DNA of 62,901 nt, the filler included, from Salisapilia sapeloensis CBS 127946 (lineage: Eukaryota; Protista; Oomycota): assembly GCA_023334545.1 (NCBI GenBank). It is 17 parts of 17 records of this genome, joined end to end, with 100 filler letters (N's around TTAATTAATTAA, not from the genome) between each part and the next. Parts side by side here need not be neighbours in the genome. Positions count along the whole stretch, not along the records: positions 7,386 to 21,307 come from JAADVB010000393.1; 16 more parts are not named here. One strand, 5' to 3'. Made by a program: the position numbers and the translations under genes. Shown here piece by piece: positions 9,376 through 20,160 of the stretch. The notes beneath the pieces are model-generated. The model saw nothing but the letters and a program-made list of their open reading frames with translations. It did not search any database and was not told the DNA's origin. Within the stretch, counting starts at the first letter, position 1. Each line of letters opens with the position of its first letter.

Positions 9376-10680
9376 TCATGATATTTGCTTCCAAAGGAAG
9401 TAGACTACTAGTAGGCTTAGCCAAGCTCGTACGAGTACACCTGTCCGTAGATCTCGATCCTGAGGTTGTACCACTGGAGTAGGAGGCAACACTTTTTCCA
9501 TCATTACTACTTGATCGCCACAAAGAAAGAGTTGGATGTCGTCTTTCGGACATGCCTCGGTGTGTCTTTTTAGCTCGACCTTGGTGCTAAATGATTTTTT
9601 CCCGTTTGGATTCAGTTCCCGTGCCGAAACTGTTGTTGACGCCATGAGAAGTGCTCGAAAGAAACCTTGGTCCCACAGTTCGAATGAAATGTCTGAATCC
9701 TTTAGCTCGACATTGATATTCCTCCATTGTGGACAAGAAGATCGTTTGGAAACGTAGCTTTGGAAGATGACTTGGTCCTGATGCTTGATGATAAGGAAAG
9801 GATTCACTTGTTTGCGACGACGTAACAGTGGTAGGACACTCGTGGAGGCACTATACAAGGTCATTTTCCCATAAATACGCTTGGATGGTGCAAGCCCCTC
9901 TGACATGGATTTAGGACGAGGTTTCTCCCGACGTTGACGAGGCATCCCGTTGATGACGTCAACTGCTTCGGAAGCGAGTTCAGTTCCGGAGGATGCGCGA
10001 CGGAGCTCGTCAGTACAGCCACCATCGTTCGATAAATCGGACTTTCGAAGGCTCGAAAGGTTGAAACTACGACGCAAGTCGACTGCCGAACCTGTTTTGA
10101 CGTCTCGAAGGAGGATGTGAGAGATGGACGTGATGATGGCGCCACGTTTCCATTGGATGATTTCCGTGAGAAGCGGCTGACGGAAGACGACGCCAGCGTC
10201 GTAGGTATATTGCGACTTTGTGGGGCCACTTAGCGTGGGACTGTTCTTCAGTTGTAGCTGTCTGCTCAGTTTGCCCACTTGGTCACCTACGAGATGAGCT
10301 AAGACTGCGTCTTGACCACGTATGATTTCATTATCCATCGTCCGCATTTCGACGTTCTTATCTAGAAACTGGTGCAGTCGCATGGTGTCGCTCTCCTTGA
10401 GTGCATGAGCAAAGGTCGAATGGAGAAGCAAAAGATCCTCTACTCGAGGAGACACCGAGTTGTCGTCATTGCTGCGCTCGGAGCGAGTATCGTCCAATTC
10501 GTCGAGTGTCATTCTATCACTTCCGTTCGGGACCGTTTCTTCCAATTGGGCACTCGGACCTGGTAATGGTGGTAGCACTTTTCGTCGATGTGGTGCATTT
10601 GCAGGTGGTGCGGTAGCGGCGAGCGCATCAGCGGCCCTCGGCCGATCAGACTTGCCTATGGCATCCTGGACTGCCCCCAT
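9376..10680 (-). CDS. Hypothetical protein: NTF2/SnoaL-like + C2-like + C-terminal TM anchor
   Basis: 434-aa ORF. LHQFLDKNVEMRT..IRGQDAV looks SnoaL-like; VNPFLII..SCPQW..ISFELWD looks C2-like; hydrophobic tail VLVRAWLSLLVVYFLW. Confidence 0.7.
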   Translation of the reverse strand: MGAVQDAIGKSDRPRAADALAATAPPANAPHRRKVLPPLPGPSAQLEETVPNGSDRMTLDELDDTRSERSNDDNSVSPRVEDLLLLHSTFAHALKESDTMRLHQFLDKNVEMRTMDNEIIRGQDAVLAHLVGDQVGKLSRQLQLKNSPTLSGPTKSQYTYDAGVVFRQPLLTEIIQWKRGAIITSISHILLRDVKTGSAVDLRRSFNLSSLRKSDLSNDGGCTDELRRASSGTELASEAVDVINGMPRQRREKPRPKSMSEGLAPSKRIYGKMTLYSASTSVLPLLRRRKQVNPFLIIKHQDQVIFQSYVSKRSSCPQWRNINVELKDSDISFELWDQGFFRALLMASTTVSARELNPNGKKSFSTKVELKRHTEACPKDDIQLFLCGDQVVMMEKVLPPTPVVQPQDRDLRTGVLVRAWLSLLVVYFLWKQIS

Positions 10681-11132
10681 TGCGAATTATAATTAGACGA
10701 ACGGTCGCAGGTGCCAGTTGCGTAGTGTTTCAATAGAAAAAGTGAGCCCTTCGCGAACACGCCGCCTGATTCTGCCAGATTATGCTGATTTACCATCAAC
10801 GATGATGATACTTTGAATGGTGGTGGCTACACTTTTTACGAGAAATATTTCTGGATGGATGATGATGTACGAAACATGGAATGGTAAGAGCAAAGCACTT
10901 GTATTCGTATCCACCGATTCATGGGTAAGACGACTTGACAAACACATTCGATATTCCTACTGTCGAAGTAGCGACTCCATCTAGAGAGTGCCATCTGTAG
11001 CCGATCGTGCATTCCACGAATGTGTAATAATCCAACTAAAATCTAGAATCAGTCAAATAAAATAATAATTAGCCAGATAAATTTTTTATTTTACCAAAAG
11101 GTGGTAAAAACGACAATACCCAACCGACGACC

Positions 11133-12458
11133 ATGGGCACCTCCGGTCGAGATGAGCAGGCGTCTCTTATTCGGTCAAATGGTTCTACCTCCTCTAGCCA
11201 CCGCCGACGTTCAAGTCAGCCCAAGTCTGGGGAGTCGCTAGGCCACACTCATCCAGGGTCAGCTCTATCCTCGTACCTCGGACTCGCCTCGACCATGATT
11301 GGGTCAGGCGTGCTAGTCCTGCCTGGCGCGACTGCTGCGCTAGGCATGACACCGACTCTCCTACTAATCCTGTGCTTTGCTATCTTTACGTTCTACACGT
11401 TTGAAATCCTACGCGTCGTCTCGGACGTCACGAACCTCTACTCGTACGAATCCTTGTCGAACAAACTGTTCGGTCCGACCGGCGTCTGGACGGTCCGAGT
11501 CACGACGCTGCTACTAGTATTCGGAGCTATGATCGTCGTTATCATCCTAGGTGTAGACATGCTAGAACCGTTCCTTGGTGACGTCATGAGTCGTGGTACG
11601 TTGGGACTCGTATACACTTTGCTCGCGGTCCCACTCTGTCTGCCAGAGACCATCTACGCCTTGCGTTACTCGAATGCAGTTGCTGCCGTGTGTCTACTCT
11701 ATATCCTCCTATCTCTCCTCATCAAGTCCTTCTCTCCCATCGACGTCGTGACACGAAGTGAATACACGCAGCATCAAGAGAGTAAAGTGACCTTGGACGA
11801 CCCCAAGGTCGAATTTAATTCGGAGCTCGCTGCTTTTGCCTACGCCGTCCCGATCATCGCTATGGCCTATTGCTGTCAGCTAAACATCCCTCGCGCCTAC
11901 GATGAAATCCATGACAAGAGCGAAACTACTAAAGTGCACATCGCGACGGCTGCCTCTGGCTGTCTATTAAATATCCTCTTCGCCGTGTTTGGTTCCCTCG
12001 CCTTTGCCGGCCACCCTCCGTCCGACCTACTCACAGGGTTCCCACCTGGCGATGGTGTCATCAACGCCGCGCGTATCTGTCTTGCCGTCACGTCCTTGGC
12101 TCGACTCCCGATGATGTTCCAGCCGATGCGTCAGGCGCTGGAGATCGTATGTCTTGGCCATGGCCGGACGAATATGCCGTTCCGAGTCGTTATCACGATC
12201 GTCTTCCTCCTGGTGTCGTACATGGCGGCATCCTCCGCCAAGGACATGGGCATGGTGATGGCGTTCAATGGCGCCATCGCTGGTATCTTTCTCGCATACA
12301 CCGTCCCAGGGTGGATGCTACATGAAGTGCGTCGTAGCTACGGAGCAGAAGTCCATATTGGCACGTCCCGTTGGTTCACGAAGAAAGCCGGGAGTACGGT
12401 TGCTGGTATTGGCATGGCAATGTCGATCGTCTCGGTCCTCTACCTCATCTTTACGTAA
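11133..12458 (+). CDS. Amino acid transporter (AAAP / Aa_trans, SLC38-like)
   Basis: About 11 TM helices; STMIGSGVLVLP, YSYESL and AYCCQLNIP motifs. Confidence 0.92.
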   Translation: MGTSGRDEQASLIRSNGSTSSSHRRRSSQPKSGESLGHTHPGSALSSYLGLASTMIGSGVLVLPGATAALGMTPTLLLILCFAIFTFYTFEILRVVSDVTNLYSYESLSNKLFGPTGVWTVRVTTLLLVFGAMIVVIILGVDMLEPFLGDVMSRGTLGLVYTLLAVPLCLPETIYALRYSNAVAAVCLLYILLSLLIKSFSPIDVVTRSEYTQHQESKVTLDDPKVEFNSELAAFAYAVPIIAMAYCCQLNIPRAYDEIHDKSETTKVHIATAASGCLLNILFAVFGSLAFAGHPPSDLLTGFPPGDGVINAARICLAVTSLARLPMMFQPMRQALEIVCLGHGRTNMPFRVVITIVFLLVSYMAASSAKDMGMVMAFNGAIAGIFLAYTVPGWMLHEVRRSYGAEVHIGTSRWFTKKAGSTVAGIGMAMSIVSVLYLIFT

Positions 12459-12599
12459 GAACGAATAGACGTACGTGGTTGCTTGCACATCGATTCCTCT
12501 AGATACCATATAGATACAGTCTATGCCGACAGATACCGAGAGAACAAGGAACACAGGATACGAGTTGAAAAAGAATGATCAATTGCTGACGATTTCCAT

Positions 12600-13580
12600 C
12601 TACTTGGTGCTGCCACCAAAGAGATTTTCATTAAAAACAGCCTTGGCCTTGTGCTGTTTATCACGGAGGTGGATGACAGTGCAGCAGACGTTGCAAAGTC
12701 GACCGGTTTCCGTGTTCTGAGATCCAGTGCCGACGCCACGCTTGGCCTCGGATGCCTTTAATGAACAGTTCTTGCATATCGTCCGGCCGCATAGGTTGCA
12801 GTCTTTAAACGTATCGAGCATGCCTTTCGGGTTTTTACATATCTTGCAACTAGTTCGAGGGACATTGACGGGTGCATTCTGCGTTCCTTCTTGCATGTAG
12901 CAAATGAGTTTAATCAACGTCTTCTTCGGTACGACGTCGCTCACCATGACGCCATTGCTGTCAGGTAAGTTGATGATCGCACCTTGGGCCACGAGAGCTC
13001 CTGCGATCTCAATGAGCTGGCGCTCCACTGCTAGATGCAAGTATGTGGTTGAGTTCTCTACCACGAGTTCATTTAGCTGTACTTCTCCGCTCTTTGTTAG
13101 CATTTTCGTGATAGTCGGATCATCGTACTTGGCTGTCATGAGGTGGATGGCAAGCGGCGTTTGACCACGCACGTTGACGGCCGTGGGTGAGGCGCCCATA
13201 TCTAGCAAAAGTTCGACCATATCGTACTCCATCCCTTCCTTATTCGCGCTAGCTGCAAAGTGTAGTGGTGTGTTGGCATGTCGGTCGCCGACATTAACAT
13301 GATCCTGCACGCGCGGGAGGTTTGCGAGTGCTCGCAGCACTTCGACATGACCTTTTTTCACGGCGATGTGGAGCGCCGACTGATGGTTCTTCCGTTCGCG
13401 TAATTGAAGGATCGAAGCGGAGGAGACGGAGGTCCTGTTGGCTGGCGACGACGCCGAGGACGAGGACGAGTTGGTCGACGACGACGCTCGCAGCTCGTCG
13501 CCGATGTCCTCTAGATCATACCCGAATTTCTGAAGCGTTGCGATGAGTACGCGAGCGGTAGCGTTCTCCTTTTCGTCCAT
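12600..13580 (-). CDS. Ankyrin-repeat protein with a FYVE-like zinc finger
   Basis: ALHIAVKKGH, TPLHFAA, GQTPLAIH and TYLHLAV ankyrin motifs; C-terminal CxxC..CxxCGRTICKNC..CxxC. Confidence 0.88.
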   Translation of the reverse strand: MDEKENATARVLIATLQKFGYDLEDIGDELRASSSTNSSSSSASSPANRTSVSSASILQLRERKNHQSALHIAVKKGHVEVLRALANLPRVQDHVNVGDRHANTPLHFAASANKEGMEYDMVELLLDMGASPTAVNVRGQTPLAIHLMTAKYDDPTITKMLTKSGEVQLNELVVENSTTYLHLAVERQLIEIAGALVAQGAIINLPDSNGVMVSDVVPKKTLIKLICYMQEGTQNAPVNVPRTSCKICKNPKGMLDTFKDCNLCGRTICKNCSLKASEAKRGVGTGSQNTETGRLCNVCCTVIHLRDKQHKAKAVFNENLFGGSTK

Positions 13581-14804: not shown

Positions 14805-16119
14805 CTACAAAATGCCCAACGTACGTAAGCGACTTTCATACTCGTTCCGGCCAATGTAGCATCCGATGAGCGACCTCTCTCCGCCTTCAAAAGCTCGGCG
14901 GCCGTGCATAACACGTTGGTTGTCGACGAGAACCATGTCACCGACACCCAATCGGACACTCACGCCCATGCTCTCGTCCCGTAGAATCGCCATTATCTTC
15001 TCATGCGCATCGTAAAACTTGGAAATCTGGTCAAAGCTTAAGTATGTCAACGGCGCTCGGTCGTAGTCATTATGACGGAACTGGACGACGTTGCCTTGGT
15101 AGTCCAACTTAATCAAAGGTTCCAATGTCGTCAAGTGCGTGCCATCATCGAATGAGTGGTACCGCAGCGGTACTGTCGTCAAGAGCTCAAACGCATCAGG
15201 ATGTTGCGCACGCAGCTTTTCAGCGACATGGAAACCGTCGGTGTAGAGACTATCTCCACCCGTCCCGGCTTGGGCAATGCAATTGAAAATCTGTAGACCT
15301 GGTGGCTCGCGCATGTACGTGCCATCTGTGTGATGCAAGAGTTCCATGTTCGTACTAGCTGTATCGTTATAACTCTGGTCGTCGTTCTGTGGATTCGTCG
15401 TCCACATGGTACCGTAGATCGTCTCTAGGATGAATCCAATTTGACGTGAAAACCTTTCCGTCTCATCCATGGAGCTTGGCGTGTCTTTCACCAAGACGAC
15501 ACCGTATATGTGCAAGTCGGACATGACAGGATAAATGTCGTTTGCGACGGATGCATACGGATGAGATGGAATGGTTAGTGAGCTATCCCATAGTGCTTTG
15601 CCGTTTAATGTCGGCTGATGGAGATCCGAAATTGAAGCGCGAGTCTCCGGCTCCGAGTATGCGTGATGACGTAACCAAGTGGAGTCAAAGGAGCTTGACT
15701 GGCACGTTGATCCTTTCTACAATAAAAGTATTAGTGCATGCTGTAGAGTATGATGGTTGCATCGAAACACATACAATGAGATCCTTCCAATTGATGCCAA
15801 GTGCATTATCCTCCCTATCGAGCATGTCCTTAATCGCAACTTGACAAGACGGATTAGCATCGATGGATGCAGTGTCAATTTGACGTTGCAACGTGTCTGG
15901 GTGTTGGCATGCACCGCAGGTACAATGATCACGCAGCCACTTTTTGTGGAATCGAGCCGAGAAGCCGTCCTCCCATGTCACTCGGATGGCCGAGGTTGCG
16001 TCTAGTTCCTCGACTTGAGCGAGTTTGGAGGCATTTCGAACGGCAAGATGCTGGCAATGAGATTGCCATAGGCTACCTGCTCGAATGGATCTAGGATGAA
16101 GTGCTCGAAGGAGGTTCAT
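14805..16119 (-). CDS. TMLHE: Trimethyllysine / gamma-butyrobetaine dioxygenase family (2OG-Fe(II)), 2 exons, 418 aa
   Basis: Intron 15717-15774. N-terminal targeting peptide, WLRDHCTC..C domain, HxD (HHTDGTY), EPPGLQ and DNQRVMHGRRAF motifs. TMLD versus BBOX judged by eye. Confidence 0.85.
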
Positions 16120-17357: not shown

Positions 17358-18493
17358 TCAGATCTTGTGCGATTGAAGCTTGCTCAGCGCCTCAATGAGC
17401 CGTTCCCAGCTTTGCGTATTTGCGATCGAGTCTGGTACGTAGCCAAATTTGCGTCTAATGACAGTGTGTACGACCCCCAAGTACTCTTGTGCCTCTTTCA
17501 CAAGTGCCGGAATCAGTTGCGAGGTGTTGGAGTGCCACTCTCGTAGTTTTGTTACTTTAGCTTTCGCATCGTGCAACTTTCGCTCGGCATACTCCTTTCC
17601 ATGCTTTAGTTCTGCAACTTGCGCAAGATGCCCCATGAAAGCATTTTCAGCATCTTGCGTCAACTTCCGAACTTTATCTTGAAGACGTCCAACCTGTTGT
17701 TCACATTCCTCCAAACGTAGTGCTAACGCGTGCTCTCTCCTGTCTGAATTGAAGAAATTATCCTGAAGCCATCTTAAACAACTTGAAGACACAGCATCGA
17801 ATCCTGATAGCTGTATCCAGTTAGTCAATGCATCATACACTGGCGTTTCATAAGCAGGAGTACCATCATTTCAGCTGAAGTGTCTGGCCTAGCGTCACTT
17901 CTTTCGTCCGCTTGAACTAACCTACTTTCCCTCTTAAATGCTTCGACGCTGTCAGGTGTCAAGCCTGGCGAAGACTGGGTTTTAAGCTTTTCTAAAGGAT
18001 GCACGTCTGCAGTTGTGTCTAACTTGGTATCAAATCGTTCAGTGTACTCTCGAATGGCAATGAGTCCATCCAGATGCTGCGTGAACACTTCTGCAAGTAG
18101 TCTTAACCTTGTTTCAATCAATTGAATATGACCGTTCGCGATTTCATTCGCCTCTGTCTTCCTACCCACTTCCACTTGTAACTTGTCTACTTTCTCTTTC
18201 AAGTCAAAAATCTCATCTTCCATTTCATCATTCCTCGTCTTTAAGTGCTGCCTCATATCCAATCCTTGCTTTTGCTTTTGTAACTTTTCATGCAACTGTC
18301 TAGCAAGGGCCAATTGATTCTCCGCTTCCCGTCTCTTCGGTCCGATCCAAGACAAGTGTTTCCTCGCTCTTTCCTGCCACTCTCTCAACTCTGTATTCTC
18401 TTTCATCAACATATCTACTTCATCTTTCAAGTGAAAGTTTTCCTGCTCTAACGCTGCGATCGTTACTTGTACATCATCGCTCATACTCGCCAT
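17358..18493 (-). CDS. Coiled-coil protein split over two overlapping frames
   Basis: ORFs 17825-18568 and 17358-17840 are both heptad-rich and overlap. They join by either a short intron or a 1-nt frameshift near 17870. Confidence 0.65.
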
Positions 18494-18578
18494 GCTTTTG
18501 AAAGGACAAGTCGTGTATCCGTTTTGCTTTATTAAGAAATCCGTTATCGAAATGTCGTCAACAAGCACTACTATCGAT

Positions 18579-20160
18579 CTAGGCCGTCCCTCGTTTCTTT
18601 CGAAAGACTAAGACTTGGTACAGCCCAGCAATCTCCCACTCGGCATCGGAGATCGAGCCATGGCAATTCGCGACACGCATCTTGCGCAAAAGTTCCTGAT
18701 GCTTTTGCATCTTGCTTTTAATATACGAATGGAAGTTTTCCTGTAGCACGAGTTCCAAGCCATATTGGTCTAGTAGCTCGAGCAAGAGATCCAATGGTAC
18801 GAGGTACTCTGGCAAATCTACGGCAGCTGCCTCTTCCTTCTCATCAGCATTGTCTCGAAGCGTGAACTTATACCGAAGACCAAAGGAGCCGCGCTTCGAG
18901 GCATCATACCCGGTCACTTTCTCCTTCGTCTCATCATCCAACTGGATGGCACACACCTCTCGTCCTCGTTCATCTCGGATGGAAAAGTTGTCATTTGAAG
19001 CAAAGAACTTTTGTAAGACACGAGACGGATCGACGGTCGTCGCGATGACCGTGCCGTCGTCACTCAAGTGCGTTTGGATCATACGAAAGAAATTATGAGC
19101 TCGACTTTCATCGGCAAAGAGATAATGGAAGGAGAACTGAATCGAAAGAACATCAAAAGTGTCCGAAGGCGTGAGTGGGATGATGCGATGCCATCCTTCG
19201 TCTTCCGTCCAGGCATTTAACTCGTCGCGAGTGAAATCGACGATACCTAAATCGGCTTCAATGAATCGAATGTTTCGAAGACGATGACTGTCACGGTTGT
19301 TCGTCACGCGCTCGACGGCATCTCGTAGCGATTGGGCAGCGATGTCTGCTCCAATATAGGCCCGAACGCCTTGCTTGGTCCACTTCATCAGGTCGCCACC
19401 TTTACCACACGCAAGGTCAAAGACACGGTCGTTGCGATGCGCGTACTCGTTGATGAGGACGGATTTCACCCAATTGTTTAGATTGCGCATGTGGAAGAGT
19501 AGAGAGGACGTTCTATCCGTCGTTTTCGCTCGTTTCAACTGGTTGTAAAAGGAAGCAGCGGCTTGTTGGTCATTTGGCGAGACAGACGTGACGGTGGGAG
19601 TAGGCATGGAAGACGAGTCTAATAAAAAATCCGATTTTAAGATCAATAGTGGAGTTATAGGTAGTGATTGGCATACCCATGGGCGGTGGAGAGTCGGTAT
19701 TTGGGACGGCAGGTGGTCCAGGAGATAGTAGATCCTTTAGCGATCTCTTTTTGCTCAAGACAGGAGGCGCCGTCGTCTCCTGCTTCTCCTCTTGTGCATG
19801 GTTCGTCTCAGACACGGTATGCGTGGAAGGCGGTGCAGGCATGTCGTCTTCGTACTGTCGACTCGCTTCTTCCTGGTCAAAGCTATACTTCCTGTCTGTG
19901 TCATTCACGCTGTCTGCTTTCTCTGGCTTGTTACGCGTGGCAGTACCCTGCTTATCACTGATGTGGAAGTAGACTTTGCGCTTATTGTCGTCGAGCTGTT
20001 GGGACCAACCTTTTGGAAGGTCGTCAAAGAACCAGTAGACTTTGTTCGTCTGAGAGTTTAAGTAGTACGGGCGGTTTTCACGCCGAGACATGGCGATTTC
20101 CCATCCGTCCGGTAGCTCGCCATCGTCATTCATTTTGGTTGTAAATAATTTGTTGCTCAT
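18579..20160 (-). CDS. RNMT: mRNA cap guanine-N7 methyltransferase with two N-terminal WW domains (2 exons)
   Basis: MRNLNNWVKSVLI, SAM motif VFDLACGKGGDLMKW, QFSFHYLF and LPEYLV. A phase-1 intron at 19619-19676 (GTATGC..TTTATTAG) joins the WW exon in frame. Confidence 0.9.

What the first reader, a model, noticed from the sequence alone, without database searches (positions are those of the whole stretch)
18579..20160. Tandem WW domains fused to the mRNA cap N7-methyltransferase
Seen: a canonical 58-nt phase-1 intron (19619-19676) joins an exon with two WW-like repeats (LPDGWE..RPYYLN..VYW; LPKGWS..KVYFH..ATRNKP) and a Pro-rich linker in frame to the RNMT/Abd1 catalytic domain. Established: the PCIF1 and Pin1/Ess1 WW domains bind phosphorylated Pol II CTD; yeast Abd1 binds the phospho-CTD without a WW domain, and human RNMT uses RAM. 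Inference: a WW-based route for recruiting the cap methylase to Pol II, and a possible lineage-specific drug target. The ORF track shows two separate genes, so automated annotation could miss the fusion.
Basis: partly seen in the sequence, partly recalled or inferred. Interest (0 to 1): 0.7.

Follow-up and report, generated by a model that had tools for sequence, protein, structure and literature searches.

The report
WW-domain cap methyltransferase gene of an oomycete
This is a real, expressed two-exon gene whose enzyme for methylating the mRNA cap carries two WW domains at its front end, but the same design is already annotated in most sequenced oomycetes, so only its likely use (docking on RNA polymerase II) remains untested.

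Summary
On the minus strand, exon 1 (20160-19677) encodes two WW domains (Pfam PF00397, E 8.7e-12, two stretches). A 58-nt GT..AG phase-1 intron (19676-19619) joins it in frame to exon 2 (19618-18579). Exon 2 encodes a complete mRNA cap guanine-N7 methyltransferase domain (PF03291, E 5.8e-66). Transcript-like contigs in four public runs (two samples, one study) skip exactly those 58 bases and cover both exons.

The product is 507 aa and this is the genome's only PF03291 locus. The architecture is not new. About 30 oomycete database proteins carry WW plus PF03291, including Phytophthora, Pythium, Lagenidium, Bremia, Plasmopara and Albugo. In Saprolegniales the WW match falls below the Pfam threshold. 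One entry is even named for the WW domain. In Pythium oligandrum and Saprolegnia diclina the gene has no intron.

What I add:
- WW1 belongs to the PCIF1/Pin1 subtype. It aligns without gaps and shares a nine-residue loop with human PCIF1.
- WW2 lacks the second tryptophan.
- The genome's Rpb1 has 29 perfect YSPTSPA heptads.
- I found no paper on this fusion.

Recruitment through the phosphorylated CTD is plausible but remains an inference. I class this as a new member of a known, annotated kind, of moderate interest.

The parts
18579..20160 (-). Whole CDS of the WW-WW-RNMT gene (two exons, 507 aa plus stop)
   Evidence: Transcript contigs cover 18400/18509 to 20126/20175.
19677..20160 (-). Exon 1 coding part: start codon, tandem WW domains, and an acidic/Ser/Thr/Pro-rich linker (161 codons plus 1 base)
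   Evidence: An alternative start at Met10 (20133) cannot be excluded, because only one of the four contigs reaches 20160.
20023..20115 (-). WW1 (residues 16-46), PCIF1/Pin1-type, with both Trp (W20, W43) and the loop SRRENRPYY
   Evidence: Pfam best stretch is 16-43. It aligns without gaps to PCIF1 WW 2jx8 at 30.1 bits and to Pin1 WW at 26 bits. The AF2 model gives three strands at 20-25, 30-35 and 41-43 with pLDDT above 90.
19924..20019 (-). WW2 (residues 48-79), atypical. The first Trp (W52) is kept. The second Trp position is Arg here and Tyr/Phe in the orthologues.
   Evidence: Second Pfam stretch, alignment A1, only weak PDB matches to Nedd4-family WW domains, and model strands 52-56 and 62-66 followed by a short helix.
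19619..19676 (-). 58-nt phase-1 spliceosomal intron, GTATGC...TTATTAG
   Evidence: Read directly from the sequence. It is skipped exactly in one contig of each of four runs (table 5).
18579..19618 (-). Exon 2 coding part: the end of the linker and the cap methyltransferase domain, including the stop codon at 18579-18581
18594..19577 (-). mRNA cap guanine-N7 methyltransferase domain (PF03291, profile positions 8-315 of 315)
   Evidence: 223 bits. It aligns over the whole domain with the catalytic domain of the cap guanine-N7 methyltransferase in PDB 8q69/5e9j, E about 1e-28.
19389..19424 (-). AdoMet-binding motif I, VFDLACGKGGDL
   Evidence: It aligns with VLDLGCGKGGDL of the solved enzyme. Coordinates were read.

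Best explanation
This is the single gene for the mRNA cap guanine-N7 methyltransferase (RNMT/Abd1 orthologue) of an early-branching oomycete-like stramenopile. Its catalytic domain is preceded by a tandem WW module and a disordered Pro/Ser/Thr/acidic linker.

Shown here: the two exons are spliced into one 507-aa reading frame and transcribed; both domains are above Pfam thresholds; and the architecture is conserved across all sampled oomycete orders.

Inferred: WW1 is of the PCIF1/Pin1 (group IV) subtype and docks the enzyme on the Ser5/Ser2-phosphorylated YSPTSPA heptads of the Pol II CTD. N7 methylation would then occur co-transcriptionally next to the guanylyltransferase. This is how the WW domains of CMTR1 and PCIF1/CAPAM work in animals, where RNMT itself has no WW domain. 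WW2 lacks the ligand-clamping second Trp, so it probably supports WW1 or serves another contact.
For: - Domains.
- Exact intron removal in four contigs.
- Single open frame.
- Only one PF03291 locus in the 22.4-Mb assembly.
- Catalytic motifs align over the whole domain with a solved cap N7 methyltransferase.
- About 30 oomycete orthologues carry WW plus PF03291. The Saprolegniales N-termini still align and give sub-threshold WW hits (E 0.004-0.05).
- Residues P17, W20, S25, Y32, Y33 and W43 of WW1 are invariant in 18 sequences.
- Orthologues in Pythium oligandrum and Saprolegnia diclina are intronless single ORFs.
- The best single-stretch PDB matches of WW1 are PCIF1 WW (30.1 bits, 16 of 27 identical, SRRENRPYY shared) and Pin1 WW (26 bits). 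Both align without gaps. PPxY-type WW domains need a one-residue gap in loop 1 and score 19 bits or less per domain.
- The AF2 model of residues 12-80 has pLDDT above 90 and its Foldseek hits are tandem-WW structures.
- The organism's own Rpb1 has 29 perfect YSPTSPA heptads.
- A review states that CMTR1 and CAPAM bind the CTD through WW domains and that RNMT lacks one:.
Against: - No binding data exist. A complex prediction of the WW tandem with six unphosphorylated heptads gave no verdict.
- From my knowledge of the Pin1 structure, the residue equivalent to Pin1 Arg14 is Ala here. PCIF1 also lacks that Arg.
- WW1 lacks the Pro that usually follows the second Trp.
- WW2 is degenerate.
- Whole-module fold matches are to PPxY-binding tandems (SAV1, Itch, YAP1, KIBRA).
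- Assembled contigs cannot exclude a methyltransferase-only isoform starting at ATG 19607.
Confidence: 0.6

Rival explanations
1. The gene is the same fusion, but the WW tandem binds a proline-rich, non-phosphorylated ligand (PPxY-like or similar). Candidate ligands are another capping or elongation factor, or the protein's own linker as a form of autoinhibition. In this reading it does not bind the Pol II CTD.
For: - Fold matches of the whole module are to PPxY-binding tandems (SAV1, Itch, YAP1, KIBRA, MAGI2).
- The highest whole-sequence PDB scores are to YAP1.
- Peronosporales and Pythiales orthologues carry a conserved SP(D/E)P.PVPAPSY motif just after the WW tandem. This could serve as an internal ligand.
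Against: - Per domain, the PPxY-type WW domains score lower (19 bits or less) and need a gap in loop 1. PCIF1 and Pin1 align without gaps.
- From established WW literature (not tested here), the His of the Tyr-binding pocket of PPxY binders is absent in WW1 of all 18 sequences.
- The PAPSY motif is not kept in the window's protein or in Saprolegniales.
Confidence: 0.22
2. The WW module has lost ligand binding. It acts instead as a dimerisation or scaffold element (as described for the atypical second WW of SAV1), or merely as a structured spacer, and recruitment relies on RNA/cap binding as in mammalian RNMT.
For: - WW2 lacks the second Trp in all orthologues.
- The best fold matches include the SAV1 WW tandem dimer 7bqf.
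- Mammalian RNMT works without direct Pol II contact.
Against: - The ligand-groove residues of WW1 (Y32, Y33, W43) and the loop Ser are invariant across lineages that are otherwise only 34-48% identical in this region. This argues for a conserved binding function.
Confidence: 0.12
3. These are two independent genes (a small WW protein and a separate methyltransferase starting at ATG 19607), and the joined contigs are an assembly artefact or a read-through product.
For: - The unspliced sequence shows two ORFs.
- The runs are contigs labelled RNA only by guess, and they come from one study.
Against: - Four independent assemblies remove exactly a GT..AG intron that restores the frame.
- Orthologues in about 30 species have the same fusion, and two were checked to be intronless single ORFs.
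- Stops close the read-through frame inside the intron.
Confidence: 0.04

Closest known systems
Annotated oomycete orthologues, e.g. Pythium oligandrum Poli38472_013449 (P0005), Phytophthora infestans PInf_002803 (P0010), Albugo laibachii F0WY.. (P0039), and the Plasmopara entry named 'putative WW domain, mRNA (guanine-N(7))-methyltransferase domain' (P0029)
   Same: They share the WW-WW-linker-PF03291 architecture and the same invariant WW residues. They are the single cap N7 methyltransferase of the organism.
   Different: - Identity is only 45-54% in the methyltransferase domain and 34-48% in the N-terminus.
- The window's gene has a 58-nt intron in the linker, where the two orthologues checked have none.
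- The WW1 loop reads SRRENRP (identical to human PCIF1) rather than SRSKNMP.
- WW2 has Arg where the orthologues have Tyr/Phe.
- In a tree, the window's protein branches outside all other sampled oomycetes (it sits on a long branch).
Human PCIF1/CAPAM (cap-specific adenosine N6-methyltransferase; WW structure 2jx8)
   Same: It has an N-terminal WW domain of the same subtype (16 of 27 identical, no gaps) attached to a cap-modifying methyltransferase. That WW domain binds Ser5-phosphorylated CTD.
   Different: - The catalytic domain is unrelated (PF12237, m6Am formation).
- It has a single WW domain.
- The window's genome has its own PCIF1-like gene without a detectable WW domain.
Human RNMT, yeast Abd1, Encephalitozoon Ecm1
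   Same: The catalytic domain is homologous over its full length, and the AdoMet and cap-binding motifs align.
   Different: None of them has a WW domain. Mammalian RNMT relies on RAM and RNA contacts, and no direct Pol II binding has been detected. Yeast Abd1 is reported to bind phospho-CTD by other means (my own knowledge, not checked here).
Human CMTR1 (cap 2'-O-methyltransferase)
   Same: It uses a WW domain to bind Ser5-P CTD and reach nascent caps.
   Different: Its WW domain is C-terminal, its catalytic domain is an FtsJ-type 2'-O-methyltransferase, and it has additional G-patch and guanylyltransferase-like domains.
Pin1/Ess1 WW domain (group IV)
   Same: The loop-1 length is the same, with the M-S-R motif, the YY pair and the second Trp. 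It aligns without gaps over 29 residues at 26 bits.
   Different: Pin1 couples the WW domain to a prolyl isomerase. From memory of PDB 1f8a, the Arg14 equivalent is Ala here.

Membership tests
mRNA cap guanine-N7 methyltransferase (RNMT/Abd1/Ecm1, PF03291) | Profile match above the curated cut-off, covering the whole domain | tested here: met
   223.2 bits against a cut-off of 26.6, profile positions 8-315 of 315.
mRNA cap guanine-N7 methyltransferase (RNMT/Abd1/Ecm1, PF03291) | AdoMet-binding motif I and the flanking conserved blocks align with a solved enzyme | tested here: met
   VFDLACGKGGDL aligns with VLDLGCGKGGDL. The NNW.KSVLI, S.QF..HY.F, PE.LV and C-terminal Y.V..F.K blocks are all aligned with 8q69/5e9j.
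mRNA cap guanine-N7 methyltransferase (RNMT/Abd1/Ecm1, PF03291) | Methylates GpppN caps at N7 | not testable with these tools
   This needs an enzyme assay or complementation of yeast abd1. Indirect support: it is the only PF03291 locus in the assembly.
WW domain (PF00397) | Profile match above the cut-off | tested here: met
   45.3 bits against a cut-off of 26.9, with two stretches. In the six-frame genome scan, the WW1 stretch alone scores 30.5 bits (C693:12647-12730).
WW domain (PF00397) | Two signature Trp 20-22 residues apart and a three-stranded sheet | tested here: met
   This row concerns WW1. W20 and W43 are invariant in 18 sequences. The model has three strands with pLDDT above 90. 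The Pro usually found after the second Trp is absent.
WW domain (PF00397) | The same signature in the second repeat | tested here: not met
   This row concerns WW2. W52 is kept, but the second Trp position is Arg (Tyr/Phe in orthologues). The model has two strands followed by a short helix. WW2 is an atypical, WW-derived repeat.
Group IV (Pin1/PCIF1-type) phospho-Ser/Thr-Pro-binding WW | Long loop 1 carrying Ser-Arg, aligning without gaps to Pin1 and PCIF1 | tested here: met
   ungapped alignments to 2jx8 (30.1 bits) and to Pin1 WW (26 bits), whereas YAP and Su(dx) need a one-residue gap. S25 is invariant, and R26 is Arg or Lys in the orthologues.
Group IV (Pin1/PCIF1-type) phospho-Ser/Thr-Pro-binding WW | Second basic residue before loop 1 (Pin1 Arg14) | tested here: not met
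   The position is Ala23 here and is variable in the orthologues. PCIF1 has Cys there (alignment). The role of Arg14 is from my memory of the Pin1-CTD structure.
Group IV (Pin1/PCIF1-type) phospho-Ser/Thr-Pro-binding WW | Phosphorylation-dependent binding to CTD heptads | not testable with these tools
   The complex prediction with unphosphorylated heptads gave no verdict. The ligand does exist in this organism: 29 YSPTSPA repeats.

The most novel reading that the evidence does not exclude
Oomycetes, from before the split of this early-branching lineage, may couple cap N7 methylation to transcription by a route found in no studied model organism. In this reading a PCIF1-type WW domain on RNMT itself binds the Ser5-phosphorylated CTD and makes RAM-like or Abd1-like recruitment unnecessary. 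This would be a clade-wide feature that sits in databases but has not been described or tested in any paper I could find.
Probability: 0.45. Interest if true: 0.5.

Novelty: new member of a known kind. Interest (0 to 1): 0.35.

Why it matters
How the cap N7 methyltransferase finds nascent transcripts differs between yeast and mammals, and in mammals it is still debated. A review states plainly that RNMT, unlike CMTR1 and CAPAM, has no WW domain and that no direct Pol II contact has been detected.

Oomycetes offer a natural counter-example in which RNMT carries a PCIF1/Pin1-type WW domain. If that domain binds phospho-CTD, it would show convergent use of one docking module by three different cap methyltransferases. 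It would also give a simple handle for studying capping in a group that includes major crop and fish pathogens.

As a gene-model matter, the finding also shows why some database entries for this gene are truncated to the methyltransferase part.

Tried and rejected
- Complex prediction of WW1-WW2 (residues 12-85) with six YSPTSPA heptads from the organism's own Rpb1 gave a score of 0.01 and no verdict. It is not evidence either way, and phosphorylation cannot be modelled.
- A Pfam PF05001 search for CTD heptads in the genome rang nowhere, not even in the controls. I found the CTD through PF04990 and translation instead.
- A word-based search with the WW region of orthologue P0005 (residues 1-85) returned only 13 close oomycete WW-RNMT proteins from 33 candidates. 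It says little about the module's origin or about more distant partners.
- I considered whether the WW domain was moved from the organism's own PCIF1 gene. That gene has no WW domain. However, short PCIF1-family proteins with no WW family listed are common in protists, so this is not evidence for a transfer.
- Three paper searches found nothing on WW-RNMT in oomycetes. A fourth failed on a term that was too short.
- The first homology query was out of frame and was corrected.
- Exons were searched separately by reference. I joined them only inside one script to check the reading frame, and printed 35 residues around the junction.

Full report
**Observation.** The gene lies on the minus strand. 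From the ATG at 20160, the frame reads through two WW-like repeats: LPDGWE...RPYYLN...VYW (residues 16-43) and LPKGWS...KVYFH...ATRNKP (residues 48-79). A linker rich in acidic residues, Ser, Thr and Pro follows.

At 19676 the sequence reads GTATGC, and at 19619 it ends TTATTAG. Removing these 58 bases joins g(19677) to ac(19618-19617) as an Asp codon. The frame then continues into the long ORF that ends at the stop codon 18581-18579. A frame check gives 1524 nt, that is 507 codons plus a stop, with no internal stop.

Pfam finds WW (PF00397) at 45.3 bits against a cut-off of 26.9, in two stretches, on exon 1. It finds the mRNA cap guanine-N7 methyltransferase domain (PF03291) at 223 bits, covering profile positions 8-315 of 315, on exon 2.

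**Expression and splicing.** One index search found four runs (two samples, one study) that hold 76-86% of the words of 18400-20400. When laid on the stretch, each run contributes one contig of 1560-1732 nt with no mismatches that skips exactly 19619-19676. On the + strand the skipped ends are CT..AC, which is GT..AG on the gene's strand. The contigs reach from 18400-18509 to 20126-20175.

A contig that lacks an intron present in the genome assembly can only come from spliced RNA, so the fused mRNA exists. There are limits. These are assemblies, the RNA label is a guess, and all four come from one study. They do not give abundance or strand, and they cannot exclude an additional methyltransferase-only transcript.

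Only one contig reaches the first ATG (20160). The others stop at 20126-20144, so Met10 (20133) is an equally possible start. Either start leaves WW1 intact.

**What the catalytic part is.** Exon 2 aligns over the whole domain with the solved catalytic domains named mRNA cap guanine-N7 methyltransferase (8q69, 5e9j, 3bgv, 1ri1), at E about 1e-28. The AdoMet motif I (VFDLACGKGGDL, 19424-19389) and the other conserved blocks are all in register. A six-frame scan of the organism's 22.4-Mb assembly finds this as the only PF03291 locus. It is therefore the organism's RNMT/Abd1 orthologue and not a side paralogue.

**Is the architecture new?** It is not. Searching exon 2 against the large protein collection gives oomycete proteins as the best hits, at 45-54% identity. 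Most of those with 490-590 residues carry PF00397 together with PF03291. They include Pythium, Globisporangium, Lagenidium, many Phytophthora species, Peronospora, Bremia, Hyaloperonospora, Peronosclerospora, Plasmopara and Albugo. One entry is named 'putative WW domain, mRNA (guanine-N(7))-methyltransferase domain, WW domain superfamily'.

Saprolegnia, Achlya and Aphanomyces orthologues lack a precomputed WW hit. They still give sub-threshold WW matches at their N-termini (E 0.004-0.05) and align well with the others.

In the alignment of 18 N-termini, P17, W20, S25, Y32, Y33 and W43 are invariant in WW1, and L48, P49, G51, W52, Y64 and T73 are invariant in WW2.

The genes of Pythium oligandrum (1485 nt for 494 aa) and Saprolegnia diclina (1452 nt for 483 aa) are single uninterrupted ORFs. 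The fusion therefore does not depend on a gene model there, and the intron seen here is particular to this lineage.

Non-oomycete hits carry no WW domain. These include the diatom Seminavis, Ectocarpus, plants, fungi, red algae and haptophytes. That survey is limited to the best 120 hits and to proteins of 188-598 aa.

Pythium insidiosum has a 409-aa entry without WW and a 517-aa entry with it.

**Where the organism sits.** In a maximum-likelihood tree of 34 RNMT sequences, the window's protein groups with the oomycetes (support 98/93) but outside all other sampled ones (94/89). It sits on a long branch of 1.1 substitutions per site, so the exact placement is uncertain. For the window, only the exon 2 translation was used. 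If the placement holds, the fusion predates the divergence of this lineage from the crown oomycetes.

**What kind of WW domains.** An AlphaFold2 model built on the 18-sequence alignment is confident for residues 12-80 (block pLDDT 90-94). It shows WW1 as a three-stranded sheet. WW2 appears as two strands followed by a short helix. Foldseek against the PDB returns tandem-WW structures first (SAV1, Itch, YAP1, KIBRA, MAGI2, Prp40). Pin1 appears among the single-domain matches at 38-46% identity.

By sequence, WW1 alone gives its best single-stretch scores to the PCIF1 WW domain and then to the Pin1 WW domain:
- PCIF1 WW (2jx8): 30.1 bits, 16 of 27 identical, including the nine-residue run SRRENRPYY.
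- Pin1 WW: 26 bits over 29 residues, with the shared M-S-R loop, the YY pair, T-N and the second Trp.

Both alignments have no gaps. YAP1, Su(dx) and other PPxY binders need a one-residue gap in loop 1 and reach at most 19 bits per domain. Their higher whole-sequence scores come from summing two domains.

[quoted passage not shown] That the Ser-Arg of loop 1, the Tyr of strand 2 and the second Trp are the phosphate- and proline-contacting residues is my recollection of the Pin1-CTD structure (1f8a). It is not a result obtained here. By the same recollection, the Arg14 equivalent is Ala in this protein (Cys in PCIF1).

WW2 gives only weak matches to Nedd4-family WW domains. It has no second Trp in any orthologue: the position is Tyr or Phe in the others and Arg here.

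**The presumed ligand.** The organism's Rpb1, located through PF04990, ends in 29 perfect YSPTSPA heptads plus degenerate ones. A complex prediction of the WW tandem with six unphosphorylated heptads gave no verdict. It counts neither for nor against binding.

**Mechanism and odds.**
- I put the fusion gene itself at about 0.95.
- The reading that WW1 recruits the enzyme to phosphorylated CTD is at about 0.55-0.6. It rests on subtype resemblance, conservation of the groove residues, and analogy with PCIF1 and CMTR1.
- The main rival is a non-phospho proline-rich ligand, possibly the conserved SP(D/E)P.PVPAPSY motif that follows the tandem in Peronosporales and Pythiales orthologues. That motif is not kept here or in Saprolegniales.
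- A scaffold or dimerisation role, as described for the atypical second WW of SAV1, is a lesser rival.
- Two separate genes is nearly excluded.

**Literature.** Full-text searches for WW domain with cap methyltransferase and oomycete, for oomycete domain combinations with WW, and for Phytophthora with cap guanine-N7 methyltransferase found no paper on this fusion. The library lacks most subscription journals, so this is weak evidence that the fusion is undescribed.

**Verdict.** The gene is a new member of an already annotated, clade-wide architecture. The functional idea is reasonable, somewhat strengthened here, and untested. I rate interest as moderate (0.35).

Noticed in passing
G000:C578:80942-84436 (L002), minus strand, ORFs at L002 2259-2678 and 1660-2244: The genome has a PCIF1/CAPAM-family gene (PF12237, E 6.6e-47 in the six-frame scan). 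No WW domain is detectable in its N-terminal ORF or within 1.5 kb, while a PCIF1-type WW domain sits on RNMT. Atlas clusters suggest that short PCIF1-like proteins of about 200-260 aa, for which only the PF12237 family is listed, are common in protists and giant viruses.
   Followed up: partly
G000:C606 (L003:2758-3411 and upstream): The Rpb1 C-terminal domain has 29 perfect YSPTSPA heptads (Ala at position 7), preceded by degenerate SP-rich repeats. It ends ...YSPSSPEYKPAEGYD.
   Followed up: partly
window 17358-18568, minus strand: Two overlapping coiled-coil-like ORFs (160 and 247 aa) have no Pfam hit and probably form one gene with a small intron or a frame change near 17825-17840. Its likely ATG (18494) lies only 85 nt downstream of the RNMT stop codon. 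The RNMT transcript contigs run into it, with ends at 18451-18509 and one contig passing beyond 18400. So either the 3' UTR overlaps the next gene's start, or overlapping transcripts were merged in assembly.
   Followed up: no
window 14805-16119, minus strand: A gamma-butyrobetaine/trimethyllysine-hydroxylase-like gene is split into two ORFs: the GBBH-like N-terminal domain (15685-16119) and the TauD dioxygenase domain (14805-15524). About 160 nt lie between them, presumably holding an intron.
   Followed up: no
window 9376-13580: Three further genes lie here: an amino-acid transporter (Aa_trans, 11133-12458, +), an ankyrin-repeat protein with a sub-threshold FYVE finger match (12600-13580, -), and a 434-aa ORF with no Pfam family (9376-10680, -).
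   Followed up: no
alignment A1, columns about 120-145 (orthologues P0003, P0006, P0007, P0010, P0029, P0036): A conserved SP(D/E)P.PVPAPSY motif follows the WW tandem in Peronosporales and Pythiales RNMTs. It could be an internal WW ligand or a phospho-site. It is degenerate in the window's protein (MPAPPSTH) and in Saprolegniales.
   Followed up: no
window 20210-20400 and beyond: Short low-depth contigs (215-224 nt) from two runs lie upstream of the gene, after an uncovered gap at about 20176-20209. This suggests a separate, weakly represented transcript in the 1.1-kb stretch 20161-21307, which is AT-rich and has few ORFs.
   Followed up: no
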